64,000 nt of DNA, taken from contig NIVC01001413.1 of assembly GCA_002269645.1 (NCBI GenBank), positions 186,001 to 250,000 of the forward strand. Direction: 5' to 3'. Origin of the DNA: Macrostomum lignano (Eukaryota). Below, in pieces: positions 4,001 to 60,800 of the stretch. Position numbers and translations under genes: made by a program. The stretch's first letter is position 1. Each line of letters begins with the position of its first letter. A model generated the notes under the pieces. The model did no database searches and was not told the origin of the DNA. It saw nothing but the letters and a program-made list of their open reading frames with translations.

Positions 4001-4480
4001 GCCAGATGTCCAGCTGTGATGCGGAAAAAATAGTCGACGAATATTACAAGGCTGCGTAAGAACGCACAGCAAAAAATCGGATGCGGCCAAATTAGTCACG
4101 AGCCAGTCTGTCGCGCTCAGAGCAGTGAAAGGTGACTGACGAAGTTCGCTTTTCAGACGTCTTCGACGCAGAAAAGCGACCAGAAGCAGCAGAGCGTTGC
4201 CAAGAGCGCCAAAAATAACTAAGCACCCGAGCACCACCAGTAGAGGTCGGAGACTGTGCAACTCTCTGAGTAGATCTCCGGCCGTCTCTGCCATTAGACT
4301 GCGAATTTCATTGGCTTCAGCCGTGTGGTTTAGACACTGGTAGAGCCGCAGCAGCCGTGTGGGGTCCATGCCATCTTCACCGACTCGCGAATCCGGTGTC
4401 CCGAGAATGCGTAAGCACGATGTCTTGTTCATGTTCAACGCTTGCACGGCTATCATGCTGAAAACCGACGAAATGATCAT
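1051..4480 (-). CDS. Rhodopsin-family neuropeptide GPCR (NPY/NPF/PrRP receptor-like), 3 exons, about 445 aa
   Basis: Exons 4480-3908, 2637-2158 and 1335-1051 join at GT-AG sites in phase 0/0. Motifs: TM1 GALGN, TM2 NLAASD, TM3 CKVVNALPGVNLFVSTFTITAIAIDRC, TM6 LAWLPLSIFN, TM7 HPLLYGLLNENFRREL. The exact start ATG is uncertain. Confidence 0.9.
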
Positions 4481-8600: not shown

Positions 8601-9920
8601 GGGAGTACGATATTTGCTAGCAGGAAATCTGCTAGCCTAAATCTGCTAGCCGAAATCTGCTAGCCGAAATCTGCTAGCTGAAATCTGCTAGCCTAAATCT
8701 GCTAGCCGAAATCTGCTAGCCTAAATCTGCTAGCCGAAATTTTCTAGCCGAAGTTTGCCAGCCGAAGCTTGCTAGCAGGAAATCTGCTAGCGGGAATTTG
8801 CTGACCGAACTTCTTGGCACCGGTGTCAAAAGATTGCTTGTTTTCTGGCAATGGTAATGCGTAGTTTTGGCTAAAAAATTCAGAGAAGTGGGTAAAAAAT
8901 CCCAAATATTTTATAACTAAAAGCATCAGCATCAGTTCAAGTGCTTAGAAAGTCAGTTTGTCATTGTGGGGGACAGAATACTCTCAAGTCGCAATCAGAT
9001 AGCTCGTAGTAGGACAGCAGTTGAATTCCTTACTAAACTGTCATGGCTTAACGTTAGCAGAGAAGGCTATAAAAAGTTATTCCAAAACACTGTACATTTG
9101 CTAGGTACATTGAGCCCTATCACCTGATCCTTGGTCTGGGGGAATGAGTTGGATGAGTCCAATGAGCGGCACAACAGAAAAAGTAGACAAAATTCACTTG
9201 CCTACAGTTTCTGTCCTGATTGAGGTACAAAGTTGAGACTATACTTTGTATTTAGACAAAGAATGACTCAATGAAGAATTGTATCAAGTTTGAAGTCAAT
9301 CGCTGTACGTGGAGCAAACTTATGGCAGCTGAAAGTTAGTCAATTTTAAACCCCTTTCACACATCTGTCCAGTGGCCAGGGAGAGAGGCGGAGGTTGGGG
9401 TGGCTGTCTCGCTGACGAAAAGCAGACTAACTTTAAAAGTACACAGTGCCGTTCAGAATTAACTTCGAGACTCGAAACTTTACACGATTGTGTCCAAATA
9501 GTTGAAAATGGATTGTGTCCAATTTGAAGAGGATTCGTAAAAGTGGAGCGACGCTATAGAGGATTTAGTGAAATTCTTGCGAAACTGGACAAGCAAATTG
9601 TCTCAAAGCTAATTACAACTTTCCGAGTTCGACTAGCCAAATTGCTGCTTGCCGGTTTTGGTTGGATTCTCGTTAGCAGATTTCGGCTAGCTAAATACTC
9701 GCTAGCAAAATTCCTGCTAGCAAGCTTCGGCTGGCAAACTTTGGCTAGCAAACCTCGGCTAGCAGATTTCGGCTAGCAGGTTTCGGCTAGCAGATTTCGG
9801 CTAGCAGGTTTCGGCTAGCAGATTTCGGCTAGCAGATTTCAGCTAGCAGATTTCGGCAAGCAAATTTCTCGCTAGCAAACTTCGACCATCAGATTTCTTG
9901 CTAGCAAATTTCATAGACCC
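8601..9920. mobile_element. Non-autonomous Foldback/Mutator-like DNA element, about 1.3 kb
   Basis: Inverted arms (8601-8800 and 9690-9920) built of 14-bp GCTAGC-containing subrepeats, with GGG termini. Degenerate 9-bp TSD GGTCTTTAT (8592-8600) / GGTTTTTAC (9921-9929). Absent from the paralogous site at about 17640. Confidence 0.8.
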
Positions 9921-9959
9921 GGTTTTTACATCTCTTTCACTAACAATATAACCTCTCAC

Positions 9960-11418
9960 CTCTTTAGAATTCCCAGACAGAGCGATAGCCAAGATCCCTG
10001 CGGCTGCAGTGGCAATTCCAACTCCAACTGCAGCTCCCAGGGCTCCTTTTTCCTGCCATGTCATGCCGTCCTCATCCGGGCTGGCCTTGGCTCGAATCCG
10101 ATGCGTGCCGTTCCAGCAGTTGTCAGTGAACAGTCCGTAGTCGCTGCCGCACGAGTCGAACAGGTCCTTCAGAGTGACGCCGGGATCGACCTTGCCAACC
10201 TGCCGGATCAGTTCCCAATCGCGAATGTCTCGTCGAATGATTTTAACGATTCGGCATTCGCCTTCGCGGTATCTGGCCCGATAGCTGATGTCGTCGTTCG
10301 GACCACCTGGAGCCGGAGGTGTTACAGCAATAAATTTTAACAATGAGCACTAGAATTTGCCCTGGTAACGGGAGGTACACTCGTATTACCAGCGTTCTAT
10401 GAAGTTTTTTGGAAGGTCGAATCCCTACGAGATAAGACATTCCAGTTTTTTAATACCAAACTGTCAATATCTAATTGTCAAGGCTTCAGTTATACATCTA
10501 CATGCTTCTATATGCTTGTTGAGTTCATTTTTAAACTTCTGGAAGTAGGAAAAGCGAAAGTTCTGTGTGCACTCTAAATGCATTTTTGCAACAATGCACT
10601 GCATCGCTTAAAAACTAATCATCAAAGAGCGTTAACGGTTCTCCATTTGTTGCGTTTTTCATACTACTATAGCAGTTTCCTCAATTTTGAGTTGATGAAC
10701 TTACAGAGTCGCTTTGAACCAAGCAAATGCCGAATTCGGCTGTCAAATTACTGTTCATCGAACGTGGGGTTTACCACCAGATAATCCATATTGAACTTCT
10801 GATTATCTTTTAACCTAAATTTTGATCTAGGTAGTGCTCCATATTGATTAGTTAAATGAGTTACACTCTCATCGATGTATCAGGGCTACATTTTGTAAGA
10901 CGGAAAGACCATATACATAAAAGTTAATATACAAGTTCATTATATGCTAGGTGTTTTGGGTCGCAAAATCCACCCGTACCGTAGATGTTAAGGATCAAGA
11001 CCTAGGATTATAACATTCCATTATTTTTTTATTAGTTGATTTTACCTGCTTTTTGGCAACTCTGTGCAAATATAGAATTCGTCATGACTCTAAATAAAGT
11101 TCAAAGAATAAAAGTTTAAACACGCATAAGGCCATAGCAAAAGCCAAATCAAATCAAGTATCAAACCGTGCAATCATCGTATATATGCGACGGAAATAAC
11201 GACGGATATGCTACCCGAAACTCACCCTTCTCAATCAGATAGAGCCCACCGTTCTTAGTAGTAACAACAGCCGCCTCGTGAACAAAGCCGTGAAGGGCAA
11301 CGGACTTGTTGCCCGCAGAATACAATGGTCGCTTGTAGATGCCAACTTTAATGACCACTTGGTCTAGGTCGATGCCGCAGTGCTTTCTACGAAGCTGTCG
11401 TTTCCGCTTGTCCGCCAT
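9960..11418 (-). CDS. Permuted NlpC/P60 (LRAT/PPPDE-like) His-Cys protein with C-terminal hydrophobic anchor, paralog 1 (about 180 aa)
   Basis: Exon 1 11418-11226 (MADKRKRQ...GFVHEAAVV...YLIEKG) joins in phase 1 to exon 2 10306-9960 (...DYGLFTDNCWNG...GALGAAVGVGIATAAAGILAIAL SGNSKE). A GTGAG follows; the true C-terminus is uncertain. Confidence 0.75.
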
Positions 11419-17510: not shown

Positions 17511-17663
17511 AAATCATTAAAAGTAACTTTGAGGTCAATTCGACTGGAAGCACCAATTGCGTCCCATCCAGGTGCAATCTTTGGGGGCCCCTTGCGATAA
17601 AGGGGATAATAAAGATTTCATGTGAGCTGAAGACTACTAATGGTTTTACATCCTTTGTCTCAC

Positions 17664-19183
17664 CTCTTTAGAATTCCCAGACAGAGCAAAAGCCAAGATC
17701 CCTACGGCTGCGGCAATTCCAACTCCAACTCCAACTTCTACGGCTCCTTTTGCCTGCCAGGTTATGCCGTCCTCATCCGGGTTGCACTTGGCTCGAATCC
17801 GATGCGTACCGTTCCAGCAGTTGTCAGTGAACAGTCCATAGTCGCTGCCGCAAGAGTCGAACAAGTCCTCCAGAGTGATGCCGGGATCGACCTTACCAAT
17901 GGGCCGGATTAGTTCCCAATCGCGAATGTCTTTTCGAGTTATTTCAACAATTCGGCATTCGCCTTCTCGGTATCTGGCGGGAAAGTTGATGTCGTCGTGC
18001 GGGCCACCTGGAGCCCGAGGTGTTATAGCAATAAAATTAACAGGGAGAACTAGAATTTTCCCTGGTATCTTGACGTAACAACCGCGTTCTATGGTATCTT
18101 TTTGAAGGTCGAATCCTACGAGACGAGAAAAGATTCCAGTTTTTTTTAATACCAAACTGTCAATATCTGATTGTCAAGGCTTCAATCAAACACCAACAAA
18201 AGCTGTATGTGCTTGATTGGAGGTTGAATAAACCGGTACAAGCTTGTTGAATTCCTTCTTTAACTTCTGGAAGTGGGAAACGCGAAAGTTCTGTGTGCTC
18301 TCTAAATGCATCTTTGCAACAATGCACTGTATCGTTAAAAACCAATCATCATGGAGCGTTAATTGTGCTCCAATTTAGCGTTTTTTCAGACTCCAGCAGT
18401 ATTTTTCTTCAATTTGAGTTGATGAACTTACAGAGCACCTTGAAACCAAGCAAATGCAGAATTCGGCTGTCGAATTACTGTTCATCGAACGTGGGGTTTA
18501 CCTCCAGATAATTCAGTTAACTTGTGATGATCCTTAAAGCTAAAGTTTAAGCTATAGGTAGTGCTCTGTATTGATTGGTTGAACGAGTTACACTCTCATC
18601 AATGCATCAGGGCTTACATTTTGTGGGACCGAAATGCAATACACAATAAATTTATATAACGTTTTAAGTGCATTGCAAGCAAGGTCTTTTGGGTTGAAAA
18701 AGATCTTGGTTCTTTAATAATCAAGGTCTATAGGATTATAATGTTCAAAGCCTACAAGGTCTGTTACAGAATGAACTATAACTATTTTTATATTAGTTAA
18801 TTTTACTGCCTTTTGGCAACTCTGTGCGATTAGTTTGGTCATGGGTCATGGCTCTAAATCGAGTTATAAAATAAAAGTTTTAACACACGTAGAAACCGAG
18901 CAAAGCCAAATAAAATATCAAACAATATACATGCGACTGAAATGAATGAAAGGATTCGTTTCTAAACTATAAAAAATATTACTCGAAACTCACCCTTCTC
19001 AATGAGATAGAGTCTACCGTTCTCAGTGGTAGCAACAGCCGCTTCGTGAACTAAGCCTAGAAGGGCACCAAACTGGCCCATAGAATACAATGGTCGCTTG
19101 TAGATATCCCCTTTGATGACGACTTGGTCTAGATCGATGCCGCAGTGCTTTCGACGAAGCTGTCGTTTCTCTTTGTCTGCCAT
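17664..19183 (-). CDS. LRAT/PPPDE-like His-Cys protein, paralog 2
   Basis: Exon 1 19183-18994 and exon 2 18007-17664, phase 1. VHEAAV and DYGLFTDNCW are retained, as is the hydrophobic tail. Confidence 0.75.
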
Positions 19184-19734: not shown

Positions 19735-21045
19735 GGTAGAGAGAAGGAGAGAGAAGGAAAGAGAATTGGAGAGAGGTGGCAGGGAGAAGGAAAGAGAATT
19801 GGAGAGAGGTGGCAGGGAGAAGGAAAGAGAATTGGAGAGGTGGCAGAGAGAAGGAAAGAGAATTGGAGAGAGGTGGCAGAGAGAAGGAAAGAGGAGAGAG
19901 GTGGCAGAGAGAAGGAAAGAGGAGAGAGGCGGTAGGGAGGAGAGAGAAGGAGAGAGGCGGCAGGGAGGAGAGAGAAGGAGAGAGGCGGCAAGGAGAAGGA
20001 GAGAGAAGGAGAGGCGGCAGGGAGGAGAGAGAAGGAGAGAGGCGGCAGGGAGGAGAGAGAAGGAGAGAGGCGGCAAGGAGAAGGAGAGAGAAGGAGAGGC
20101 GGCAGGGAGGAGAGAGGAGAAAGGCGGCAGGGAGAAGGAGAGAGAATTGGAGAGAGGTGGCAGGGAGAAGGAAAGAGAATTGGAGAGGTGGCAGAGAGAA
20201 GGAAAGAGAATTGGAGAGAGGTGGCAGAGAGAAGGAAAGAGAATTGGAGAGAGGTGGCAGAGAGAAGGAAAGAGGAGAGAGGTGGCAGAGAGAAGGAAAG
20301 AGGAGAGAGGCGGTAGGGAGGAGAGAGAAGGAGAGAGGCGGCAGGGAGGAGAGAGAAGGAGAGAGGCGGCAAGGAGAAGGAGAGAGAAGGAGAGGCGGCA
20401 GGGAGGAGAGAGAAGGAGAGAGGCGGCAGGGAGGAGAGAGAAGGAGAGAGGCGGCAAGGAGAAGGAGAGAGAAGGAGAGGCGGCAGGGAGGAGAGAGAAG
20501 GAGAGAGGCGGCAGGGAGGAGAGAGAAGGAGAGAGGCGGCAGGGAGGAGAGAGAAGGAGAGAGGCGGCAAGGAGAAGGAGAGAGAAGGAGAGGCGGCAGG
20601 GAGGAGAGAGAAGGAGAGAGGCGGCAGGGAGAAGGAGAGAGAAGGAGAGAGGCGGCAGGGAGGAGAGAGAAGGAGAGAGGCGGCAAGGAGAAGGAGAGAG
20701 AAGGAGAGGCGGCAGGGAGGAGAGAGAAGGAGAGAGGCGGCAGGGAGAAGGAGAGAGAAGGAGAGAGGCGGCAGGGAGGAGAGAGAAGGAGAGAGGCGGC
20801 AGGGAGGAGAGAGAAGGAGAGAGGCGGCAAGGAGAAGGAGAGAGAAGGAGAGGCGGCAGGGAGGAGAGAGAAGGAGAGAGGCGGCAGGGAGAAGGAGAGA
20901 GAAGGAGAGAGGCGGCAGGGAGGAGAGAGGCGGCAGGGAGGAGAGAGGCGGCATGGAGGAGGAGAGAGGAGAGGCGACAGGGAGAAGGAGAGAGGAGAGA
21001 GGCGGCAGGAAGAAGGAGAGAGGAGAGAAGCGGCAGGGAGGAGAG
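19735..21045. repeat. Purine-rich (GA) compound minisatellite, about 1.3 kb
   Basis: Units such as GGCGGCAGGGAGGAGAGAGAAGGAGAGA. The long ORFs in six frames come from the repeat. Confidence 0.95.
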
Positions 21046-22589
21046 AAGCCCTTGCCCTCTCGCAATTATAAAATACATACGAAGTGAAGATTTTTGCCAA
21101 GTTTCAAACTAAAAGTTAGACTTTCTGCACTTCCCCGTCCTTTTGAAGCAGCCATCAGCAACAATGAGTTCATACTAGGGTCATGCGCGGACACCAAGGA
21201 CTTTGCTCCCCCCTTGCTCTTTGCTCAGTTAAACGTAGAAGAGATTACGGGACTGAATTGTCTCCTGCTATGCAAAATGTGCATTGATACATTTCTATTG
21301 TGCTCGGATAGAATCTTAAGGAAACCAAACCATTTCTCACTAAGGTTTCATGCCTCTTACCTCCCGCCAATCAGAATAGCCATGGAGTAGATGCTTTCTC
21401 AGAGTTTAAAGGAAACTCAGATACACACAATTACCCTCATCTCTCTCTCACTCTCACTTTGAAGGTCTTTCGACTTGGATTCTGTAATCCTGTGTGAGAA
21501 GCTTTCCAACAACAAGTTGCATACGTACATGTAGTTCTTTCATTTTTTAGTTCTTCTGTTAGAGAATTTTAGACCAATGGGATTCCCTATTTTGCATCAA
21601 AGAAAAGATCGCAATATGTTACGGATTGCATTTTAATCAGATATTGAATAAACGCATTAAATCTGGCGATGCTTACCCATTCATTATTATGGGATCTTTC
21701 AGGAGAATCAATGGTACGAGCTGGGTAAACTTTTTTAAAGAGCATTCTGTTTTTTATTCTTGATATTCAATGCGTCATTTCTCCAATATCTGCTTTGCGT
21801 AATATTTTTGAAATGAATCGTTTATTTAAAATCAAAATCGGCTGACATCTTTGAAAATTGAAATATTGTGAAAGGTAAAATATTACAAGATCATTTTTGC
21901 AAACAAGGCAGTTAACGGCAGTCCATCGTTGGTTTTCTTGTCAGATAAGTAAGGATGCAATTTTTGAGCGATTAATAACCAATATAGCACGAGATGCGGT
22001 GCGTTGGCGCTTTTTTAGTATCAATAATAGAGAAAAAACAAAAAAAACACAACGAACGGAGGATTTACTAATGTGAAATATGCATCGCATAGTCATGTCA
22101 GTATTAGATTACACATGCACTATACATATAAGACAGAGGAGTCGCTCGATATCACTTCAGAGACCGAAACTGGCACAAGTTTGCAGCTAAGCGTGTTGAT
22201 CCTCCGAGCAATTTGATCTGCTAAACCGCAAGCTGATCACTGCTTGGCTTTTTCCTTCTGAAAATTCAAATTGGTAAGAGCGTATAGCTTGTGAAATATA
22301 TTATTAGCAATAAATATATGCTAGGTGTCACTTCATGAACCTGAAAAATTCAGCAAAACATTTTTCACGCTTTTTTAGTGTACTGTATCAATCTCCATCA
22401 GACTCTCATCTCAAGCTGACAACAAATACCAGTAAGTCCGTGGACGACGAGTAAATAAGCAGGAGATGCAGAAGAAATCGGTGAAAGAGATGATTTAGAT
22501 TGAACTCTGAAGCCATATGGACAAGTGTTTGATGAAGACAGAGCCCGCCTTCGTGACGCACACGACGACAACGGGCAGAATTTATTTTT

Positions 22590-27224: not shown

Positions 27225-28329
27225 TCATTTATTACCGCGCAAGCCCAGCTGTGGCCCAAGCACCGCCAGTGATCTTTTAGCCGGAGCTAGGCTGTCAGTA
27301 ACCCCGGCGTGGCCTCGTTTCCTAGCCATCCTGTTGTCTCCGTCAGCAGCTGGGTTCTCCGCTGACGGCTTGCGCACCACCAGAGCCCGCTCTTTGGCCT
27401 CCTCGCTGTGACTGTACGGACAGCGGTGCCCCCGATCGCATCGACCAGATAGGAAGCGTCTGCACAGCGGTATCCGTTTTAAACCGCTGCTTCTGCTAGC
27501 GGAATTAGTTGCCGCTTCTATCGGGGTCACGTGATGCGCTAATACGGCTAACTTCTTACGCTCGGCTTTATGGTACTCGGTTACAAATGCGGATTCGTGC
27601 TCAGCTGATGCGGCCGCAAAACTTGGCAATAGATTCGAGGAACTACTGGCTTGTTGCTGCTGCCGATTGCTGTTTTGCTGCTTCAAGTCTGTACTATCCA
27701 ATTCACTGTCTTCGAGTTCGACGTCTATTTCAACGAATCCGTCGCTTTGATTGTCGTCTGTGTCCTCGTCGCTGGGGCTGTTGCTATGGTCAGAGGCAGA
27801 CTGAATCAGACCAAAACTGTTGCTGCCGCTAATAAGTTTGCTGCTTCGTTTCTCTTCCGTTGATTTGCTTTCCTCATCTTCAGCTGTTGCAGTGTCTGAG
27901 TTGTGCTCTGGGCAGGAATGTTGAACATATTTAATAACTCAGACTACTTGATAATCACGAGTAAATTTATCCAATGTACATTTAGCTACCAAAGTAAAAG
28001 GACGATACTTTTTTCAATATTTCTTTTTCCATTTTACCTGTGTTATCTGCAACAACTCTGGGGCGCTTTTATAATGACTCTGAGGGCCGTAGAGTCGAAA
28101 TTTTAAATTTCACACCCAGAACATAAAATTTAGAAAATATGAAAAGCAAAAAAAACACATCTCGCTTACCATCATCATATTTAGCATCATCAAAGTCTCC
28201 ATCACTGTCGCCTGCAATTTCGCTCGATTTTTGTTTTGTACTTTTATAATTTTTCACTGCCTCAGCAGCCTCGGGAGCATCGCCTTCGCTCTCGCTGCCG
28301 CTACTATAAGCTACTAGCGCGGATGCCAG
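27225..28329 (-). CDS. CCCH zinc-finger protein (about 280 aa), with no in-frame ATG at its apparent N-terminus
   Basis: Exon 28329-28170 (LASALVAYSSGSESE...) joins in phase 1 to exon 27907-27225 (acidic region, then CRRFLSGRCDRGHRCPYSH, a C-x7-C-x5-C-x3-H finger). Confidence 0.75.
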
Positions 28330-28389: not shown

Positions 28390-30081
28390 TTAACGCTTAG
28401 TAACGGACGCGATAATTGGCTTAGGCCGGTCGCGAAAAACCAGCTTGTTTCGTATGACGCCAACAATTTGATTGCCGCGAATCACAGCCAGTGGCTTCTC
28501 AAGCGGCACCGATTTGCCCTGGATTAAGGGAATTAAGAAAAATGAAATTTATTACAAATATTCTGGTTAATTTTAAATGTCAATCACGAATTCTAGATTA
28601 AGATTAGCTAGAAGATAAATCTCTCACAATTATTTAACTGAAAAAGCAGCGCGTCTATTCTTTTTTCAGCGCTTTGTTACTTAAACTTAATGGGACAGCT
28701 AAAATTTCCTTTCCTTCCTCGGGGTCAAGATAAACAACAAGCATTCGGGTTAGATAAAGCCTAGGGCAGGCCCATTCAGCTCGGCCAATGAGAGCAGTAA
28801 GGAGAGAAGTCAAAATCAGACGGACGAAGCTCAGCCTAGGGGACAGGCACAGTCTAGCTCAGCCAATGAGAGAGCAGTAAGGAGAGAGGTCAGAGTCAGA
28901 CGGACGAAGCTCAGTCTAGGGGGCAGGACCTGTAAGCGATAGCTTACTGATAGTAAAGCTATTTGAACATGGCGCGAATTCCTCACATGGTGGACTAGAA
29001 AATGTCGCCATGTGCAAGGGCGCATAAATAGCAGTTCCACTCAGTTGGCTAGAGGTGGAGCCGACCTCGTGTGGCTATGACTGACTGACGAGGGCAAACA
29101 AGCCCGAAACCGGTCTCAGTCTGCCCCGCATGGTTCGATTCCCACTTTTAGCCGCTGATAGGACCAATCTAGCTCAGCCAATGAGAGAGCAGTAAGGAGA
29201 GAGGTCAGAGTCAGACGGACGAAGCTCAGCCTAGGGGACAGGCACAATCTAGCTCAGCCAATGAGAGAGCAGTAAGGAGAGAGGTCAGAGTCAGACGGAC
29301 GAAGCTCAGCCTAGGGGACAGGCACAATCTAGCACAGCCAATGAGAGAGCAGTAAGGACAGAGATCAAAGTCAGACATGAGGAAAGCCAAACTGTTTATC
29401 GGTCTGGCTGGGGACCGGGGCGCCGCGCCGCGCCACCCCTTTTCCCTTTTGCTCACTATGCACCCGCACTGGATTTGGATTTTTCAATTTTTCCGGCAAT
29501 CTTCAGTATTGAATTTATTTCTGTTGAAATCAATTACAGCCTAAATTAGTGGGTCTGCTTTTAGAAAGCCGATGGCGATTTTTTCAGCTTTATTATCCTG
29601 TAGACTTAACGGATTTTTAATTTTAGTAAAGCAAAAACGCTAAATTTGCTACTGACAAAAGTAGACTAGTGCATTTTTTGCAAGCGACATATCTTACCTA
29701 CCTATTCTAGTATGTGATGTCCATAAATAAGCATTTGACAAGCGAGGTAAGGATAGTTATTACTAGAACTCTTAATTAATTAATTACCTGCAATAAATGG
29801 TGACCAACAATAAGCAGAGGCTGTCCAGAATGCCGACTAAACAGCAGATCGCCAATAAGTCCGCCGCGAAGTTTTTCTTCCTGATCAATGAGATTATCTT
29901 CGGCTAAAGTGCGACTTTCAAAACTGCCTTGCAATTCAATGAGACTCCAGCAGCCTGTTTGGTTGCCGGATTCCAGCTGTGGCAGCTGCACAGTTAGCTG
30001 CTGAAGTTGAGCATTTAAAGTGCTTATTTTTAGCAATTTGAAGTTGAAATTATATTGTAAGCCTGGAAATTTCATGGCCAA
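28390..30081 (-). CDS. CHTF8: Chromosome transmission fidelity protein 8 (CTF18-RFC subunit)
   Basis: Exon ending at 29788 (WSLIELQG...GLIGDL...QPLLIVGHHLLQ) joins in phase 0 to exon 28518-28390 (GKSVPLEKPLAV...KLVFRDRPKPII). The start is either ATG 30081 or a spliced start near 29997-30000. Confidence 0.9.
28931..29160 (+). mobile_element. Solo-LTR-like / retrozyme-like insert, about 230 bp
   Basis: Flanked by GGACC direct repeats (28926-28930 and 29161-29165), with imperfect terminal inverted repeats TGTAAGCG...CGCTGATA, an internal CATAAATA, and a hammerhead. Confidence 0.6.
29079..29121 (+). ncRNA. Minimal type I hammerhead ribozyme
   Basis: Stem I GACTGA/TCAGTC, core CTGACGA, stem II GGGC-AAACAA-GCCC, GAAA, palindromic stem III CCGG, and a GTC cleavage triplet ending at 29115. 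Confidence 0.85.
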
Positions 30082-36970: not shown

Positions 36971-39893
36971 CTCTTATATTAACCTGACTGTAGCTTCATT
37001 CAATGCTCGCACTCTCTCTGCCGACTGGAGACTGCGCGAGCTGACCAAAGCTGCCTCTGACCTCTCCATCTCTATTCTTTCAATCCAAGAGCATCGCCGC
37101 AGGCTTCCTGAAGACCTCGAGGCCAGTCTGTACAATGGTGGAGGTTCACAGCCTCACCTGCCTCTGTCCAAGGCGTGGGGGCATTGGCTTCGTGCTCTTC
37201 CCAGAAGCCTCCCGGTCGCTCGATCCTCTCGATCAACTGTTTATCTGAGCGCATCGGTCATGTCTCCTTTGCTCTGAAGGACAGGCACCTCAATGTCATC
37301 TGTGTGCACGCGCCAACTGCACCAAACACAGCTTCAGACCCATCTACAACTGAGAGCTTCTACGACCAACTGAACGCCCTTCTTGACCAGCTGGCCTCCC
37401 GGGACCTCATCGTTGTCACCGGCGACTTCAATGCTCCCCTCCCAGTTGACGGCCGACTGGTGAAAAATCGTTGCGGCTCAGCTAATGCCAACAAAAGTTT
37501 CCTCTGTGACTTCATTCATTCTCGCGACCTGATGGCGGCGAATGGCTGCCTTCGCCAACGCCTCAGTGTTCTACCAAATTTCCATGGCCCAAACGGTCGC
37601 GCAACACCCGCCTCGACTGGATTCTCTGCCCAATGTCACAGAGAGCTCGTCTGCGGGCCATTCGTAACATCACCCTGAAATGCATCCCACCTGACCACAC
37701 TCTCCTGTGCTGCAGACTGGACCTTCGCTGGCACCGCTTCAGGAGGCCGACCAGTCCCCTGCCCTACTGGGGTGCACTCAACAACTCTGAAATCAGATCG
37801 CACTTCCTGCGACAAATCAAAGACTCGGGGTTCCGCCTTGACAGCAGCTATGACAGCTTTTCCGCCTCTGCGGCAGCAGTGCTCCCCCAGGAGGCAACCG
37901 CGGCAATCGGGTGCACACTAGGACTCTCACCCGATGTCATCAGAGCCCGGCAAGACATGCAAGCCGCAGTTGACCGACATGGCACTGCCAGCATTGCTGC
38001 CTCCACCGCGGCTGAGGCACTGCAAGCTGCCCACATCCAAGCTTCTGAGCTGTCTACCCAAGAAGCTGTGACGGAGATCAAGGCTGCCACTGACAACTGC
38101 CGTCATGCTGCGGCCTGGCGCACCATCAACCGCCTCACAGGGCGGCGAGCCGCGCCGAATGCTATCATCAACGCTGACTCCATCGAGCACCGCCTACAAC
38201 TGATTGCGGGCCACTTCCATTTTGTGCTCAATGCCCCAGATCCCAGCGCTACTCTTCGCCCGCTCGCTGACTCTCCACCTGCCTGCCCATCCGACTTCAA
38301 TTAATATTGCGCTCCGATCTCCATGGATAAAGTCTCCAAGGCCCTAAGAACCATGCGGGCTGATGCAGCAGCGGGAATCGATGACATCCCACCGCGTGTC
38401 CTGAAGACGCCTGAGCTGCTGCTTGTCATCACCGGAATTCTCAACTGCTCCTGCTGCATGGGTGGGGACTCAACTGCTAGTGCCTCAGAGCGATGGAGAA
38501 CTTCTAAGATCGTGGCCATCCCAAAGAAGAGCAACTCTATAGCGGCCTCGACAACCTGCGTGGCATAGCTCTAGAGTGCACTCTGGCCAAAGTCCTCAAC
38601 ACCATCCTTCGAAGTCGCATTCAACCCATCGTCAACCAGAGGCTTCTCAACATCTAGAGTGGCTTTCGACCTGGACGGTCAACAGCAGAACAATTCGCTG
38701 CGATCTGGTGCATCATTGACACCTGCGAGACTCGCCAAAAGGCGGTGTCAATTGTTTTTGTAGATTTCTGCAAAGCTTTTGACTCGTCAGCCGGGCGGCC
38801 ATTGCCTGGCTCCTCCAGCAGCATGGAGTTCCTCAGCTGCTGGTTCAGGCGATCATGGACCTCTACAGCTCGTCCAAGGCTTTTGTCCAGACTGAACATG
38901 GCCCTACATCTGAATTTGCCACCACCTCCGGGGTCCTGCAAGGTGACACCCTATCACCGCTTCTATTCGTTATCCTGATCGACTACGCCATGCGGCTGGC
39001 TCTGGCGCGACGAAGACGGCTATGAAGTGGTGCCTCGCCGCAGCTCCCACTTTCCCTGTGTCAAGCTGACCTGTCTCGCCTACGCCGACGACTTGGCGCT
39101 GACCTGCTGCAGCCCCGAAGCTGCGCAGAGGGTGGTGAGTCGGCTGGCTGACGAGGGGAAGCGCGTGGGGCTCCACATCAACCACGGCAAGACAGAGGTG
39201 CTGCATGTTGGCATTGCCAACTCTCCACCGCTGCTTCTACCGGACGGCAACACCATCGCCCCGTGCAACCAGTTCAAGTATCTGGGCGCCCTGGTCCCTG
39301 ACCCGGATGCCATTGTCAACAACCGCAAGCAGCTGGCGTGGAGGGCCTCCCACCTTCTCCGCTCCATCTTCAACTGCCGGCTCGCCACCGACAGCCTGAA
39401 GGTCGCCCTCTTCCGCTCGGCAGTTGAGGCGGTGCTGACCTACGAGCTGGAAGCTGTTCCCATGACTGCCACTCATGAGGCGAGCTTGGAGGCCTGCCAT
39501 CGTCATCTCCTGCGCGATGCCCTGGGCATCCGGTTCCCCGAGCGCGTGAGCAACGCTGAGCTGACGGCCCGGACCCGCATTCTGCCCCTGGGTCGCACTT
39601 TGGGTCGCACTTTGCAGAGGCGACGCCAGATGTTGATCGGCCACTGCCTGTGGGCCCTCACACAGGGCACCGGGCCCCCGCTCGCTGACCTGCTGCTCAG
39701 CCCGCCTTGTGGGAGACTCCGCCGGGGCCAGGCGCGCTGCACCACTCTGACTGACACCTTTCTCACTGACTTGCAGGCTCTGGGCCTGACCCCTCAGTCT
39801 GCAGCCAGGCTGGACTCAGCTGTTTTCCACCAACGGGTACTTCGCTGGCCCCTGCGCCAGCGTCTGTTTAATAATAATAATAATAATAACAAT
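36971..39893 (+). mobile_element. Degenerate RTE-like non-LTR retrotransposon (APE + RT)
   Basis: APE motifs SFNARTL, IQEH and GDFNA; RT motifs GVLQGDTLSPLLF and LAYADDL; (AAT)n tail; 12-bp TSD AACAGCAAGGAA (36959-36970 and 39894-39905). Several frameshifts and stops. Confidence 0.92.
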
Positions 39894-40730
39894 AACAGCA
39901 AGGAAATTCAGCATTTCACGGATCACTACTGTACCTACTGATACGAGTAATATGGGATTCGCATCTGCTACGCTCGTATCAGCCTTACAGATCTAGAGAA
40001 CTTTAACGAGATTAAAGATTCGAATTAAAATATCAAGGTCATCCTAGTTGACTAATTGATCACGTGCTAAGAGTTAGTTGCTGCATAGGTCCAGTGGGTT
40101 GTGAGTTTTGGGTTTTGCTTCTATTTTTCTGCCGAAACTGCCACTGCCAAGCATGAAGCACGTGATACGTTTAATATAATGATCGAGCTAATTTGTAGCA
40201 ACTTCAACAGGCATTTGGTATTTTCGGTGCATAGAAAAAAATAGTTTGTTTTCGATCGAACACAAACGGAAATCAACGATTAATGATGGAAGTTGGTTGC
40301 AGAAGCTAAATAGCGCGGTCGAGTTGCAATAATTAACCCTAATTGTTCTTTCACATATGAAGCTATTATAGTCAGGAAATTGATTAGCCCGAATTTTGTT
40401 GCTTTTTATCCCGACAGAAAATTAAACACTGCACGAAAGCGCAAAAAAATTAGACCCGTTTTAATGACGCAGAAAATATTTTTTGTTTCACAAATTGCCC
40501 TGTTTACACGCGAAACAACGCAGATGTCATAAATTTTGAGCGGCCTCTGCAACGGGTGTATAAATATAGGAATGGAAACTGTCAGGCCGGAGCCAAGCGA
40601 TCCTGTTCGTTAAACATAGGCCTTTACCTTTTGAACGAATTTCGGCAGTCAAGTAAGTTCAATATCGATATTTCTCATGTCAAGATTTGCATTAGGTAGC
40701 TTCGACCATAGACCAATTTAAGGTGGCTGG

Positions 40731-47600: not shown

Positions 47601-50600
47601 CTCTAGACTGCGAGTGGTAACAACAGTGATCTACGGGATCTACAAAACAACAGTAACCATACCTTATGGAGACAAGTAACTGTAGTAAGTTGTCTTGGTA
47701 CAAACGTACTCAATACACACACTCGCCCAAAATCCAGGAACAACTTTAACCCAAACTCACTGCACCACAAAACTCATCCATAACTTTACTCCGGCAGATG
47801 GTCCTTGCCAGTCGAGGCGAAATCATTTCCGCTGGTAATTTTCACGGCGAATATCCGGCTAAAGCCTTGGATTACCTCGCCATTGGGGTGCACGAGCTGG
47901 CCAACATCTCTGAGAGGCGAACCGAGAGACTCATGAATCCCAGTAAGTTCAACTGTGATTGCATGAAAGTCAGCTAACACGTTTGGTCATGGAGCAGCGT
48001 GACGAAATACTAAGTTAAACTATTTTAGCCTACAGCGGACTGCCCGCCTTTCTGGTTAAGGACGGAGGCCTGAATTCCGGCTTCATGATAGCCCACTGCA
48101 CTGCTGCGTCTTTAAGTAAGTCAGTCCGCGTCCTAACCTTAAAACTCAAACAAACCTAAAAAATGCCTACAATAGTTGAGGTCCATGAAAACTGGCTGTG
48201 AAACTAAATCCTAAAGGTAGCCTAAACCCTAGACTTAATTGTCGGCAGCCAAATCCTACATGTTGATCCTTGACACACTGAGGTCCCTATTTACCTCACA
48301 CTTGATACTAGCTGAATTGAAAACGAACTGGTGATCAGGGTCTCGTATAGACTCAAAGCTAATTAATAAAGACAAAAAACACAAGAGATTGACAGACAAA
48401 ATACACGAGGAGAGACAGACAAAATACACGAGGAGAGACAGACAAAATACACGAGGAGAGACAGACAAAATACACGAGGAGAGACAGACAAAATACACGA
48501 GGAGAGACAGACAAAAGACACGGGGAGAGACAGACAAAGGACATGGGGAGAGACAGACAAAATACACGGGGAGAGACAGACAAAAGACACGGGGAGAGAC
48601 AGACAAAAGACACGGGGAGAGACAGACAAAATACACGGGGAGAGACAGACAAAATACACGAGGAGAGACAGACAAAATACACGAGGAGAGACAGACAAAA
48701 GACACGGGGAGAGACAGACAAAATACACGGGGAGAGACAGACAAAATACACGGGGAGAGACAGACAAAGGACATGGGGAGAGACAGACAAAAGACACGGG
48801 GAGAGACAGACAAAAGACACGGGGAGAGACAGACAAAAGACACGGGGAGAGACAGACAAAGGACATGGGGAGAGACAGACAAAAGACACGGGGAGAGACA
48901 GACAATAGACACGGGGAGAGAGACAGACGAAAGACATGAGGAGAGACAGACAAAGGACATGGGAAGAGACAGACATAATACACGGGGAGAGATAGACAAA
49001 AGACACGGGGAGAGAGACAGACGAAAGAGATGGGGAGGGACTGACAAAAGACACGGGGAGAGACAGACGAAATACACGGGGAGAGACAGACAAAAGACAC
49101 GGGGAGAGACAGACAAAAGACACGGGGAGAGACAGACAATAGACACGGGGAGAGAGACAGACGAAAGACACGGGGAGAGACAGACAAAGGACATGGGGAG
49201 GGACTGACAAAAGACACGGGGAGAGACAGACGAAATACACGGGGAGAGACAGACAAAAGACACGGGGAGAGACAGACAAAAGACACGGGGAGAGACAGAC
49301 AAAAGACACGGGGAGAGAGACAGACGAAAGACATGGGGAGGGACTGACAAAAGACACGGGGAGAGACAGACGAAAGACACGGGGAGAGACAGACAATAGA
49401 CACGGGGAGAGACAGACAAAATACACGGGGAGAGACAGACAAAAGACACGGGGAGAGACAGACAAAAGACACGGGGAGAGAGACAGATGAAAGACATGGG
49501 GAGGGACTGACAAAAGACACGGGGAGAGACAGACGAAAGACACGGGGAGAGACAGACAAAAGACACGGGGAGAGACAGACAAAATACACGGGGAGAGACA
49601 GACAAAAGACACGGGGAGAGACAGACGAAAGACACGGGGAGAGACAGACAATAGACACGGGGAGAGACAGACAAAAGACACGGGGAGAGACAGACAAATA
49701 CACGGGGAGAGACAGACAAAAGACACGGGGAGAGACAGACAAAAGACACGGGGAGAGACAGACAAAAGACACGGGGAGAGACAGACAAAAGACACGGGGA
49801 GAGACAGACAAAATACACGGGGAGAGAGACAAAATACACGGGGAGAGACAGACAAAAGACACGGGGAGAGACAGACGAAAGACACGGGGAGAGACAGACA
49901 ATAGACACGGGGAGAGACAGACAAAATACACGGGGAGAGACAGACAAAAGACACGGGGAGAGACAGACAAAAGACACGGGGAGAGACAGACAAAAGACAC
50001 GGGGAGAGAGACAGACGAAAGACATGGGGAGGGACTGACAAAAGACACGGGGAGAGACAGACGAAAGACACGGGGAGAGACAGACAATAGACACGGGGAG
50101 AGACAGACAAAAGACACGGGGAGAGACAGACAAATACACGGGGAGAGACAGACAAAAGACACGGGGAGAGACAGACAAAAGACACGGGGAGAGACAGACA
50201 AAAGACACGGGGAGAGACAGACAAAAGACACGGGGAGAGACAGACAAAATACACGGGGAGAGAGACAAAATACACGGGGAGAGACAGACAAAAGACACGG
50301 GGAGAGACAGACAATAGACACGGGGAGAGAGACAGACGAAAGACACGGGGAGAGACAGACAAAGGACATGGGGAGGGACTGACAAAAGACACGGGGAGAG
50401 ACAGACGAAATACACGGGGAGAGACAGACAAAAGACACGGGGAGAGACAGACAAAATACACGGGGAGAGACAGACAAAATACACGGGGAGAGACAGACAA
50501 AATACACGGGGAGAGACAGACAAAAGACACGGGGAGAGACAGACGAAAGACATGGGGAGGGACTGACAAAAGACACGGGGAGAGACAGACAAAAGACACT

Positions 50601-51566
50601 GGGAGAGACAGACAAAAGACACGGGGAGAGACAGACAAAAGACACGGGGAGAGACAGACAAAATACACGGGGAGAGACAGACAAAAGACACGGGGAGAGA
50701 CAGACAAAAGACACGGGGAGAGACAGACAAAATACACGGGGAGAGACAGACAAAATACACGGGGAGAGACAGACAATAGACACGGGGAGAGACAGACAAA
50801 ATACACGGGGAGAGACAGACAAAATACACGGGGAGAGACAGACAAAATACACGGGGAGAGACAGACAAAAGACACGGGGAGAGACAGACAAAAGACACGG
50901 GGAAAGTCAAGGGAGAGAGACAATACAACGATGTAAAAACCCATTTTAAACCGGCAAAAATCTTTCATTCAATATGCAACCAATTCATTTTCTTCTACAC
51001 TCGCCACAACAGCCTCTGAGAACAAGGTGCTGTGCCATCCGTCCAGCGTGGACTCACTATCCACCAGCGCCGGACAGGAAGACCACGTCAGCATGGGCGG
51101 CTTCTCCGCTCGCAAGAGTCTACGCGTTGTTGAACACGTCGAACAAGTACTGGCCATCGAGCTCCTAGCGGCTTGCCAGGCCATGGAGTTCCTGCGTCCG
51201 TTGAAAACCACCGCACCCCTTGAGGCGGTTTACCGCCTAGTCCGAGAAAAGGTGCCAGCCTGGGAGCGCGACCGCTACATGGCGCCAGACATTGTTGCCG
51301 CCACGGCGCTACTCCGCAGCGAGAAAGTCTGGCAGACGGTGGCGCCGTACATTGCCGAATACGAGAGCCTGGTGACTGACGAGATGCGGCCAACCAGCCC
51401 GACAGCTTTCTGCATCGGCCAGCAACGGAAGCGACTGACATCGGCTAGCAACGGATCGCCGACAGAGATTCCACCGACTGTACCCACTGCTGCTGCAGCG
51501 TCTGGCGCCTCGACAATTTCGCCAGTGCCAACCTCGCCTGTGAGCAAGCGCTCCAGGCTACAGTGA
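44611..51566 (+). CDS. HAL: Histidine ammonia-lyase, 10 exons
   Basis: Exons 44611-44842, 45406-45493, 45597-45708, 45785-45857, 45950-46017, 46260-46662, 47060-47391, 47798-47942, 48029-48115 and 51013-51566 are phase-consistent. Motifs [11 protein letters not shown]-forming [14 protein letters not shown] and QEDHVSMG; N-terminal Par3/HAL-type domain. Confidence 0.97.
48385..50920. repeat. 23-bp minisatellite (GACAGACAAAAGACACGGGGAGA), about 2.5 kb, in the last HAL intron
   Basis: Directly visible tandem units with variants. Confidence 0.97.

Positions 51567-52870: not shown

Positions 52871-60800
<7,930 letters not shown>

What the first reader, a model, noticed from the sequence alone, without database searches (positions are those of the whole stretch)
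28926..29165. Hammerhead ribozyme inside a solo-LTR-like insert in the CTF8 intron
Seen: a complete minimal type I hammerhead (29079-29121) with a palindromic CCGG stem III, downstream of a TATA-like motif, within a ~230-bp insert that has a GGACC duplication and TGTAAGCG/CGCTGATA ends and interrupts one unit of an 80-bp array. Established: minimal hammerheads with palindromic stem III cleave as dimers and occur in Penelope-like pLTRs and retrozymes, while LTR-type retrozymes are described mainly from plants; 5-bp TSDs and TG starts are typical of LTR elements. Inference: the relic of a ribozyme-bearing LTR or retrozyme family in an animal, possibly producing circular RNAs. It is antisense to CTF8, so it would not cut that pre-mRNA.
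Basis: partly seen in the sequence, partly recalled or inferred. Interest (0 to 1): 0.8.

Follow-up and report, generated by a model that had tools for sequence, protein, structure and literature searches.

The report
Solo hammerhead-ribozyme mobile element in flatworm intron
A 229-base mobile element carrying an intact self-cleaving hammerhead ribozyme has inserted into an intron of the CTF8 gene of the flatworm Macrostomum lignano; it is real, but it belongs to a kind of ribozyme-bearing retroelement already well known in animals.

Summary
Window 28931-29159 is a 229-bp insertion flanked by a 6-bp duplication (AGGACC). A second copy of the locus in the same Macrostomum lignano assembly is about 97% identical and lacks the insert. 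It shows the exact empty site, with one AGGACC.

The insert carries an intact type I hammerhead (29068-29132, cleavage after C29115). Helix I has 6 bp plus an internal loop and a distal helix. Helix II has 4 bp. Helix III is a single A-U pair capped by palindromic CCGG. This is the classical metazoan hammerhead, not only a 43-nt minimal motif. It lies antisense to CTF8.

The solo-LTR reading fails: there are no TG...CA ends, and the ribozyme is type I rather than the type III of plant LTR retrozymes. The best fit is a solitary single unit of the non-LTR retrozyme / Penelope-associated kind. In metagenomes, at least 17 of 31 loci with this hammerhead architecture lie beside Penelope-like ORFs. 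Retrozymes are already reported in trematodes and triclads.

With one ribozyme and a 1-bp helix III, this copy probably cleaves poorly and cannot release a circular RNA by itself. No other copies could be retrieved, so the subclass remains open. It is a new member of a known kind, of modest interest.

The parts
28931..29159 (+). 229-bp inserted element (51% GC, no ORF; the longest stop-free stretch is 48 codons)
   Evidence: It interrupts one 80-bp array unit. It is absent from the 97%-identical second locus L036, where alignments break at 28930|29160. There is no other copy in the window.
28925..28930 (.). Target-site duplication, left copy (AGGACC)
   Evidence: The empty site in L036 carries a single AGGACC.
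29160..29165 (.). Target-site duplication, right copy (AGGACC)
29068..29132 (+). Complete type I hammerhead. Distal helix I is 29068-74/29126-32. The internal loop is 29075-78/29122-25. Helix I is 29079-84/29116-21. The CUGACGA box is 29085-91. Helix II is 29092-95/29102-05 with loop AAACAA. GAAA is 29106-09.
   Evidence: Rfam HH9 32.7 bits, E=1.1e-6. Custom model R1 46.8 bits, E=2e-12, a unique hit in the window. The active fold evaluates at -24.6 kcal/mol.
29109..29114 (+). Helix III: A15.1-U16.1 pair capped by palindromic CCGG (ACCGGU), able to form a 6-bp intermolecular helix in a dimer
   Evidence: Read from the sequence. Forming the single pair costs +5.7 kcal/mol in the monomer, whereas the ACCGGU self-duplex gives -8.3 kcal/mol. 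The same architecture is described for amphibian HHR_Amex1 (PMC7229834).
29115..29116 (+). Predicted self-cleavage site (GUC|U), 185 nt from the 5' end of the insert and 44 nt from its 3' end
   Evidence: Position of C17 in the hammerhead alignment.
29041..29158 (+). Long imperfect hairpin (extended helix I) with the hammerhead at its tip. It closes one base before the 3' end of the insert.
   Evidence: MFE structure of the insert.
28932..29032 (+). Two further hairpin domains (28932-47 and 28958-29032). The TATA-like CATAAATAG lies at 29023-31.
   Evidence: The whole insert folds at -92.1 kcal/mol, z=-5.7, against -79.1, z=-3.4, for the minus strand.
29132..29149 (+). Exact Pol III B-box consensus GGTTCGATTCC (29132-42), followed by TTTT (29146-49)
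   Evidence: It is the only B-box match in the 64 kb, where 0.27 is expected. The A-box resemblance upstream is not significant. tRNA models fail.
28758..29376 (.). Host 80-bp tandem array (about 5 units, each with AGCCAATGAG), split by the insert
   Evidence: TRF and the unit alignment. The second locus has 8 units.
28519..29787 (-). CTF8 intron (GT...AG on the minus strand) containing the array and the insert. The flanking exons are 30075-29788 and 28518-28390.
   Evidence: Translation. Pfam Ctf8 on the spliced product. A Ctf8 gene is also called at the homologous place in L036 and L038.

Best explanation
The insert is a solitary, single-unit copy of a hammerhead-bearing non-autonomous retroelement. 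It belongs to the metazoan 'non-LTR retrozyme' / Penelope-like-element (PLE) associated kind. The host is the flatworm Macrostomum lignano.

Shown:
- A 229-bp structured element integrated at a staggered cut, giving a 6-bp TSD.
- It carries an intact canonical type I hammerhead on the strand antisense to CTF8.

Inferred life cycle:
- Master copies elsewhere, either tandem units or PLE terminal repeats, are transcribed.
- Two hammerheads pair through the palindromic ACCGGU to build a stable helix III, and each RNA is cut after GUC.
- Unit-length RNAs are ligated into circles by a host RtcB-type ligase.
- A reverse transcriptase supplied in trans copies the RNA into a nicked target. A PLE RT with GIY-YIG nuclease is the most likely source.

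The cleavage site lies inside the insert, 185 nt from one end and 44 nt from the other. The template was therefore not a self-cleaved linear monomer. It was an uncleaved or re-ligated (circular) RNA.

At this locus the element is probably inert. It has one ribozyme with a 1-bp helix III, so monomer cleavage should be poor. There is no second site to release a circle, and there is no effect on the CTF8 pre-mRNA.
For: - Hammerhead intact and statistically secure. Its architecture (helix I 6 bp, helix II 4 bp, helix III 1 bp with a palindromic tetraloop) is the one described as canonical for metazoan repeats (PMC4209133; PMC7229834).
- True insertion with TSD and an empty site.
- The size of 229 bp is within the 150-450 bp of animal retrozyme units. 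Coral and jellyfish units are 220-245 nt.
- No ORF.
- The RNA is highly self-paired and strand-asymmetric: + strand -92.1 kcal/mol, z=-5.7; - strand -79.1, z=-3.4.
- A TSD longer than 4 bp fits what is reported for animal retrozymes.
- Retrozymes are already recorded in the flatworms S. mansoni and Schmidtea. Dispersed monomers are common.
- Of 31 metagenome loci with the same hammerhead architecture, at least 17 lie next to PLE ORF1 or RT+GIY-YIG ORFs. One holds a 185-bp tandem dimer.
Against: - Only one copy was seen. No relative of the non-ribozyme part was found in the window, in 44 kb of further M. lignano sequence, in metagenome, genome or viral contig scans, or among predicted proteins.
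- The defining tandem arrangement is absent at this locus.
- No PLE ORF lies in the 64 kb, and whether M. lignano has PLEs was not established.
- GC of 51% is slightly above the '<50%' quoted for animal retrozymes.
- Retrotransposition itself is inferred. There is no poly(A) tail and no RNA data.
Confidence: 0.5

Rival explanations
1. It is an ordinary, heavily 5'-truncated copy of an autonomous Penelope-like element, that is, a fragment of its terminal pseudo-LTR region rather than a dedicated non-autonomous unit.
For: PLE insertions are typically strongly 5'-truncated, carry the hammerhead in the pLTR and have TSDs of variable length (PMC8557442). Most single hammerheads in S. mansoni were read as truncated PLEs (PMC4209133). 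At least 17 of 31 metagenome loci with this hammerhead type sit beside PLE ORFs.
Against: The ends of the insert coincide with the ends of a closed three-hairpin fold (nt 2 to nt 228), which looks like a complete unit rather than an arbitrary truncation. There is no PLE ORF, tail or inverted partner in the window. In several metagenomic families the homology starts only 47-85 nt upstream of the cleavage site, unlike the 185 nt here, but that comparison is weak.
Confidence: 0.2
2. It is a tRNA-derived, Pol III-transcribed SINE carrying a hammerhead, like the Sm-alpha / Sj-alpha elements of schistosomes, mobilised by a LINE.
For: An exact B-box GGTTCGATTCC at 29132-42 is the only one in the 64 kb, where 0.27 is expected. 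TTTT follows 4 nt later. Upstream there is a D-arm-like CTCAGTTGGCTAGAG and a TATA-like motif. The host is a flatworm, and Sm-alpha is a tRNA-Gln-like SINE with a hammerhead (PMC2770079). A 6-bp TSD is compatible with this reading. An APE-type LINE is present in the window.
Against: No tRNA model recognises the element: Rfam gives E>10, ARAGORN finds nothing at default settings, and a pseudo-hit appears only at an 80% threshold. The A-box match is not above chance. The putative boxes lie 110-210 nt into the element, so a Pol III transcript from them would miss the 5' 100 nt of the insert and end 10 nt before its 3' end. The two 'boxes' are simply the two strands of the extended helix I. There is no A-rich or simple-repeat tail, and no shared 3' end with the LINE in the window.
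Confidence: 0.15
3. It is a solo LTR of an LTR-type retrozyme or TRIM, left after LTR-LTR recombination.
For: A 6-bp TSD is within the 4-6 bp range of LTR integrases. The element starts with TG. A TATA-like motif lies upstream of the ribozyme. TRIMs with tRNA-like boxes in their LTRs (Helenus) exist in animals, and TRIMs are reported in cestodes (PMC10886601).
Against: The termini are TG...AT, not TG...CA, under any TSD of 3 to 6 bp. There are no terminal inverted bases. The ribozyme is type I, whereas LTR retrozymes carry type III (PMC7229834). Animal Helenus makes 4-bp TSDs. No partner LTR, PBS or PPT is visible.
Confidence: 0.06
4. It is a cut-and-paste DNA transposon (MITE) or a chance hammerhead-like sequence in unrelated DNA.
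For: The element is short, non-coding and flanked by a short TSD.
Against: There are no terminal inverted repeats: the local score is 4 against a shuffle mean of 5.1. The hammerhead core, all three helices and the distal helix are intact, which chance does not explain.
Confidence: 0.03

Closest known systems
Metazoan non-LTR retrozymes (Cervera and de la Pena 2020, PMC7229834), including the units reported in S. mansoni (285 nt) and Schmidtea mediterranea (379 nt)
   Same: Canonical type I hammerhead, with helix I of 6 bp, helix II of 4 bp and a very short palindromic helix III. The unit is about 230 bp, non-coding and strongly self-paired. The TSD is longer than 4 bp. There is no LTR, PBS or PPT.
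   Different: This copy is solitary rather than tandem. GC is 51% rather than below 50%. There is no sequence similarity outside the ribozyme to anything retrieved. Expression as circular RNA is unknown.
Penelope-like elements and their hammerhead-bearing pseudo-LTRs (PMC4209133, PMC8557442)
   Same: The hammerhead has a dimer-forming helix III. PLEs also have TSDs of variable length and frequent truncated solo copies.
   Different: There is no PLE ORF, tandem or inverted partner, or tail at this locus. The ribozyme is the 'canonical' form, not the published PLE 'min-HHR' (helix II 7-8 bp, no helix III).
Sm-alpha / Sj-alpha SINE-like hammerhead elements of schistosomes (Ferbeyre 1998; Laha 2000; summarised in PMC2770079)
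   Same: A flatworm host, a short dispersed non-coding element, a type I hammerhead with a helix I internal loop and a 6-nt loop 2, and a Pol III B-box-like motif.
   Different: Sm-alpha is recognisably tRNA-Gln-like to tRNAscan-SE, whereas this element is not recognised by tRNA models. The box positions here are incompatible with transcribing the whole unit.
Amphibian satellite 2 / axolotl HHR_Amex1 hammerheads
   Same: Helix III is a single base pair capped by a palindromic tetraloop. That form cleaves weakly as a monomer (6% in 1 h) and efficiently as a dimer (PMC7229834).
   Different: The host lineage and repeat sequence differ. The amphibian units are about 330 bp and occur in huge tandem arrays.
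Plant LTR retrozymes
   Same: A non-autonomous retroelement with a hammerhead and a short TSD.
   Different: The plant elements have type III ribozymes in true LTRs with PBS and PPT, 4-bp TSDs and units of 600-1000 nt. None of these features is seen here.

Membership tests
Hammerhead ribozyme, type I (canonical metazoan form) | Conserved core: C3U4G5A6N7G8A9, G12A13A14, A15.1-U16.1, H17 | tested here: met
   CUGACGA at 29085-91, GAA at 29106-08, A29109-U29114 and C29115.
Hammerhead ribozyme, type I (canonical metazoan form) | Three helices around the core with helix I open-ended, and helix I and helix II base-paired | tested here: met
   Helix I has 6/6 pairs and helix II 4/4 pairs, with a 7-bp distal helix. 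The same pairs covary in 21 metagenomic relatives, where the two unconstrained helix II pairs are 100% paired with 4 pair types each.
Hammerhead ribozyme, type I (canonical metazoan form) | Score at or above an Rfam hammerhead gathering threshold | tested here: not met
   HH9 scores 32.7 bits against 52. The shortfall is mainly the deleted helix III hairpin of that model.
Hammerhead ribozyme, type I (canonical metazoan form) | Self-cleavage, and tertiary contacts between loop 1 and loop 2 | not testable with these tools
   An internal loop CUAU/UGCC and loop 2 AAACAA are present. L028 shares CUAU/UGC. Activity needs an in vitro transcription assay.
Non-LTR retrozyme | Tandem repeats (two or more units), so that two hammerheads flank a unit | tested here: not met
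   There is a single copy. No second copy lies in the 64 kb or in L036/L037. The arrangement elsewhere in the genome was not testable.
Non-LTR retrozyme | Unit of 150-450 bp, non-coding, without LTR, PBS or PPT | tested here: met
   The unit is 229 bp. The longest stop-free stretch is 48 codons. No PBS-like or LTR features were seen.
Non-LTR retrozyme | Highly self-paired RNA | tested here: met
   -92.1 kcal/mol, z=-5.7, with 0 of 200 shuffles as stable.
Non-LTR retrozyme | Expressed as linear and circular RNA | not testable with these tools
   No transcriptome data were available.
Penelope-like element | ORF with a telomerase-like RT plus a GIY-YIG endonuclease | tested here: not met
   tblastn of a metagenomic PLE RT-EN and ORF1 against the window gave nothing below E=5.
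Penelope-like element | Pseudo-LTR arrangement: partial tandem or inverted copies, with a 30-40-bp tail | tested here: not met
   There is no repeat of the insert in the window. Terminal redundancy is limited to a 7-mer.
Penelope-like element | Hammerhead in the terminal repeat | tested here: inconclusive
   The same hammerhead architecture lies about 230 nt upstream of ORF1 in tandem PLEs from metagenomes. No link between this particular element and a PLE could be shown.
Solo LTR / LTR retrozyme / TRIM | TG...CA termini (short inverted ends) | tested here: not met
   TGTAAG...GCTGAT. No choice of TSD length gives a CA end, and there is no terminal inverted repeat.
Solo LTR / LTR retrozyme / TRIM | TSD of 4-6 bp | tested here: met
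   A 6-bp AGGACC, confirmed by the empty site.
Solo LTR / LTR retrozyme / TRIM | Type III hammerhead (LTR retrozymes); paired LTRs with PBS and PPT | tested here: not met
   The ribozyme is type I. No partner lies in the window. The rest of the genome was not testable.
tRNA-derived SINE (Sm-alpha-like) | tRNA-related head recognised by tRNA models | tested here: not met
   The Rfam tRNA model gives no hit at E<=10. ARAGORN finds none at default settings, and only a pseudo-hit at an 80% threshold.
tRNA-derived SINE (Sm-alpha-like) | Internal Pol III A and B boxes placed so as to transcribe the unit | tested here: inconclusive
   The B-box is exact and locally unique. The A-box is not above chance. 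The boxes lie in the 3' half of the element.
tRNA-derived SINE (Sm-alpha-like) | A-rich or simple-repeat 3' tail, or a LINE-derived 3' end | tested here: not met
   The element ends ...TTTTAGCCGCTGAT. It shows no similarity to the LINE at 37-40 kb.
TIR DNA transposon / MITE | Terminal inverted repeats | tested here: not met
   The best local match of the two ends scores 4, against a shuffle mean of 5.1.

The most novel reading that the evidence does not exclude
The element could be a discrete, self-contained hammerhead retroelement with fixed ends that coincide with a closed three-hairpin RNA fold. It would have its own Pol III-type signals (an exact B-box followed by T4). It would then be either an animal TRIM/LTR-type retrozyme or a new SINE type in which the ribozyme sits inside a tRNA-like shell, moving as a defined linear unit rather than by rolling-circle copying of a circular RNA.
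Probability: 0.08. Interest if true: 0.6.

Novelty: new member of a known kind. Interest (0 to 1): 0.3.

Why it matters
Hammerhead-bearing repeats are known in many animals, so the existence of this one is not surprising. It has three modest values.

- It places such an element in Macrostomorpha. No paper in the searched library mentions a hammerhead ribozyme in Macrostomum. M. lignano is a flatworm model with transgenesis, where mobilisation and circular-RNA formation could be tested.
- It offers a clean filled/empty pair with a 6-bp TSD for a single unit.
- The ends of the unit do not coincide with the ribozyme cleavage site. The template that was copied was therefore uncleaved or re-ligated RNA, not a self-cleaved linear monomer.

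For CTF8 itself the insert is probably neutral.

Tried and rejected
- Rfam at gathering thresholds found nothing. The motif appears only with the permissive search.
- tRNA gene or tRNA-like head: ARAGORN at default settings, with introns, and on a deletion series removing the ribozyme gave no gene. At an 80% threshold it gave a pseudo 'tRNA-Phe' at 29073-29155, whose 'anticodon' is the hammerhead GAAA. I rejected this.
- Search for other copies:
  - blastn in the window.
  - Exact or degenerate pattern scans of metagenome and viral contigs with the specific ribozyme sequence: 0 hits.
  - A relaxed pattern gave 31 metagenome loci and 2 bacterial MAG loci. The two bacterial hits and three of the metagenome hits (L006, L016, L032) lack helix I and are chance matches. 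None of the hits shares anything with the insert beyond the ribozyme.
  - The 48-codon stop-free frame of the insert against 1.84 billion protein representatives gave only low-complexity noise.
  - R1 found no hammerhead in 44 kb of further M. lignano sequence or in L001/L002.
- Searching papers for the ribozyme sequence string gave irrelevant hits.
- Organism identification: the HAL exon (65-69% to many phyla) and the LINE RT (metagenome-only hits) failed. A lineage-specific paralog gave Macrostomum lignano at 100% identity.
- Locating PLE 3' ends relative to the hammerhead by comparing metagenomic family members: the assemblies are tandem or permuted, so the boundaries were uninformative.
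- The original Sm-alpha paper (PMC108972) is not held.
Full report
WHAT IS THERE

Window 28931-29159 is a 229-bp block that interrupts one unit of an 80-bp tandem array (TRF; unit alignment). The array lies in the 1269-nt intron of a two-exon gene on the minus strand. The exons are 30075-29788 and 28518-28390, with a GT...AG intron. The spliced product matches Pfam Ctf8 at 31.5 bits against a cutoff of 22. The block is flanked by AGGACC on both sides (28925-30 and 29160-65). The interrupted unit is exactly 6 bp longer than its neighbours once the block is removed.

ORGANISM AND EMPTY SITE

Two attempts to place the window failed. The HAL exon is 65-69% identical to proteins from many phyla. 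The LINE RT has only metagenomic relatives at 41-65% identity. A lineage-specific paralog (window 17646-18155, minus strand) then hit Macrostomum lignano proteins at 100% identity. The window is part of NIVC01001413.1 in assembly GCA_002269645.1.

A second copy of the locus lies on NIVC01000029.1 (L036) and also holds a Ctf8 gene. It aligns to the window flanks at 96.5-96.9% identity. The alignments stop exactly at 28930 and resume at 29160, so the 229 bp are absent. Six of the eight array units in L036 read CTAGGGGGCAGGACCAATCTAGC. That is the predicted pre-insertion sequence with a single AGGACC.

The block is therefore a real insertion at a 6-bp staggered cut. Strictly, its absence from L036 could also reflect later loss by unequal exchange between array units. 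The TSD shows how it arrived in either case. The TSD copies are identical and the ribozyme is intact.

THE RIBOZYME

On the + strand, 29079-29121 reads GACUGA-CUGACGA-GGGC-AAACAA-GCCC-GAAA-CCGG-UC|UCAGUC. All core positions are canonical. Helix I has 6 bp and helix II has 4 bp with a 6-nt loop. A15.1-U16.1 is the only pair of helix III and is capped by palindromic CCGG. Cleavage is predicted after C29115.

Rfam HH9 aligns 29067-29139 at 32.7 bits, E=1.1e-6 for that search. This is below the gathering score of 52, largely because that model expects a helix III hairpin.

Helix I continues through an internal loop (CUAU / UGCC) into a 7-bp distal helix. In the minimum-energy fold of the whole insert it continues further, as a long imperfect hairpin spanning 29041-29158. 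This is the 'canonical metazoan type I hammerhead' of Cervera and de la Pena: helix I 6 bp, helix II 4 bp, helix III 1-2 bp with a small palindromic loop (PMC4209133). Its helix III is the form described for axolotl HHR_Amex1. That ribozyme cleaves 6% in an hour as a monomer and efficiently as a dimer (PMC7229834).

Energetics agree with this:
- The active fold without helix III evaluates at -24.6 kcal/mol, against an MFE of -27.6 for a competing register.
- Closing the single helix III pair costs +5.7 kcal/mol.
- An ACCGGU self-duplex gives -8.3 kcal/mol.

RELATIVES OF THE RIBOZYME

A relaxed pattern (CTGANGAGNNCN6GNNCGAAACCGGTC) found 31 metagenome loci and 2 bacterial MAG loci. The matches with full 20-nt flanks gave 26 distinct sequences. 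Of these, 21 have at least 4 contiguous helix I pairs, although helix I was not in the pattern. The two helix II pairs left free by the pattern are always paired, each with four pair types.

A covariance model built from these 21 sequences finds the window ribozyme at 46.8 bits (E=2e-12) and nothing else above 13.8 bits. This E-value is partly circular, because the pattern came from the window. The Rfam result is independent of it.

At least 17 of the 31 metagenome loci carry Penelope-like ORFs next to the ribozyme: an ORF1, an RT+GIY-YIG ORF, or both (Pfam on L018; tblastn). L018 is a tandem PLE with a 5006-bp unit and the ribozyme about 200 nt upstream of ORF1. L008 contains a 185-bp tandem dimer of ribozyme units. 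None of these loci resembles the insert outside the ribozyme.

WHAT KIND OF ELEMENT

- The insert has no ORF.
- It has no terminal inverted repeat.
- It has no TG...CA termini, no poly(A) or simple-repeat tail, and no second copy in the window.
- No PLE ORF lies in the window.
- As RNA it is unusually structured on the ribozyme strand (-92.1 kcal/mol, z=-5.7). The other strand is less so (-79.1, z=-3.4), which points to selection at the RNA level.
- The three hairpin domains begin at nt 2 and end at nt 228, so the insert looks like a complete unit.

Its size falls within the 150-450 bp of animal non-LTR retrozymes, and coral and jellyfish units are 220-245 nt. The same paper's supplement lists retrozymes in S. 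mansoni and Schmidtea. A 2026 preprint reports dispersed monomers and derives animal retrozymes from PLE pseudo-LTRs.

I therefore read the insert as a solitary unit of this known kind (confidence 0.5). A truncated PLE end is the nearest rival (0.2).

The cleavage site is internal, 185 nt from one end and 44 nt from the other. The copied template was therefore not a self-cleaved linear monomer.

THE POL III LEAD

The insert contains an exact B-box (GGTTCGATTCC, 29132-42). It is the only one in 64 kb, where 0.27 is expected. TTTT follows it, and a D-arm-like CTCAGTTGGCTAGAG lies 90 nt upstream. Schistosome Sm-alpha is a tRNA-Gln-like SINE with a hammerhead, so this rival deserves weight (0.15).

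Several things count against it:
- tRNA models do not recognise the element.
- The A-box resemblance is not above chance.
- The two 'boxes' are the two strands of the extended helix I.
- A transcript driven from them would not contain the first 100 nt of the insert.

THE LTR READING

A 6-bp TSD and a TG start are compatible with an LTR. The end is ...GAT, the ribozyme is type I, and plant LTR retrozymes have type III ribozymes, PBS/PPT and 4-bp TSDs. Animal tRNA-bearing TRIMs (Helenus) make 4-bp TSDs. I give this reading 0.06.

CONSEQUENCES AT THIS LOCUS

The ribozyme is antisense to CTF8 and cannot cut its pre-mRNA. With a single cleavage site and a 1-bp helix III, the copy is expected to cleave poorly and cannot release a circular RNA on its own.

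LIMITS

- No other copy of the element could be retrieved with the available collections.
- Subclass, partner enzyme, copy number and activity are therefore inferred, not shown.
- Whether the two loci are homeologs, paralogs or haplotypes was not resolved.

VERDICT

It is a new member of a known kind, with interest of about 0.3.

Noticed in passing
window 29132-29149 and 29073-29155: An exact Pol III B-box consensus (GGTTCGATTCC) followed by TTTT lies inside the extended helix I of the hammerhead. At an 80% threshold ARAGORN folds 29073-29155 as a pseudo-tRNA whose 'anticodon' is the hammerhead GAAA. It is unclear whether this is a relic of a tRNA-derived ancestor or coincidence.
   Followed up: partly
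window 28758-29376; L036 4713-5339: Each unit of the 80-bp intronic array carries a CCAAT-box-like AGCCAATGAG. The array has about 5 units in the window and 8 in the second locus. The AGGACC junction variant dominates in L036 but occurs only at the insertion site in the window.
   Followed up: partly
window 29079-29121: The repeated ACTG register (GACTGACTGAC) lets the CUGA box pair with GGUC in the minimum-energy fold (-27.6 against -24.6 kcal/mol for the active fold). This competing structure would further damp monomer cleavage.
   Followed up: partly
window 37175-39941: A degenerate APE-type LINE (Exo_endo_phos plus RVT_1 fragments in different frames, with a poly-Asn tail). Its only relatives in the protein database are unnamed metagenomic ORFs at 41-65% identity.
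   Followed up: partly
window 9843-10343 and 17646-18155 (minus strand); L036, L037: Tandem paralogs of an uncharacterised protein family without a Pfam match. Hits come only from Macrostomum lignano, at 79-100% identity. At least two copies lie on the window's contig and three on the contig of the second locus.
   Followed up: partly
whole window, e.g. 19738-21046, 48391-50903, 56177-58057, 58489-59868, 61396-62633: The density of long minisatellites is extraordinary: TRF lists 25 rows, some of which are overlapping descriptions of the same array. Units are 4-30 bp (with higher-order periods up to 381 bp) and copy numbers reach 158. Together they cover a large share of the 64 kb and create long spurious ORFs in several frames.
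   Followed up: no
window 51027-51566 (+), 62998-63711 (-), 2149-4480 (-), 27225-27701 (-): Other genes seen: the last exon of histidine ammonia-lyase, a GCM-domain exon with poly-Q/poly-A tracts, a rhodopsin-family GPCR in two exons, and a CCCH zinc-finger ORF next to CTF8.
   Followed up: partly
L018 1-10604; also L021, L004, L023, L024: Metagenomic Penelope-like elements assembled as head-to-tail tandems. Each unit has a 432-aa ORF1 without a Pfam match, an RT+GIY-YIG ORF, and a canonical-looking hammerhead (4-bp helix II, ACCGGU helix III) about 200-250 nt upstream of ORF1. This is not the published PLE 'min-HHR' form.
   Followed up: partly
L008 541-911: A 185-bp tandem dimer of hammerhead units (99% identical) nested in a 792-bp higher-order repeat that also holds a 212-aa ORF. 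It is a retrozyme-like array in a freshwater metagenome contig.
   Followed up: no
L028 (minus strand, around 1224-1272): One metagenomic hammerhead shares not only the core but also the internal-loop sequences (CUAU / UGC) and a GUGUG-type distal helix with the window ribozyme. Nothing beyond that matches, which may indicate a conserved loop 1 design.
   Followed up: no
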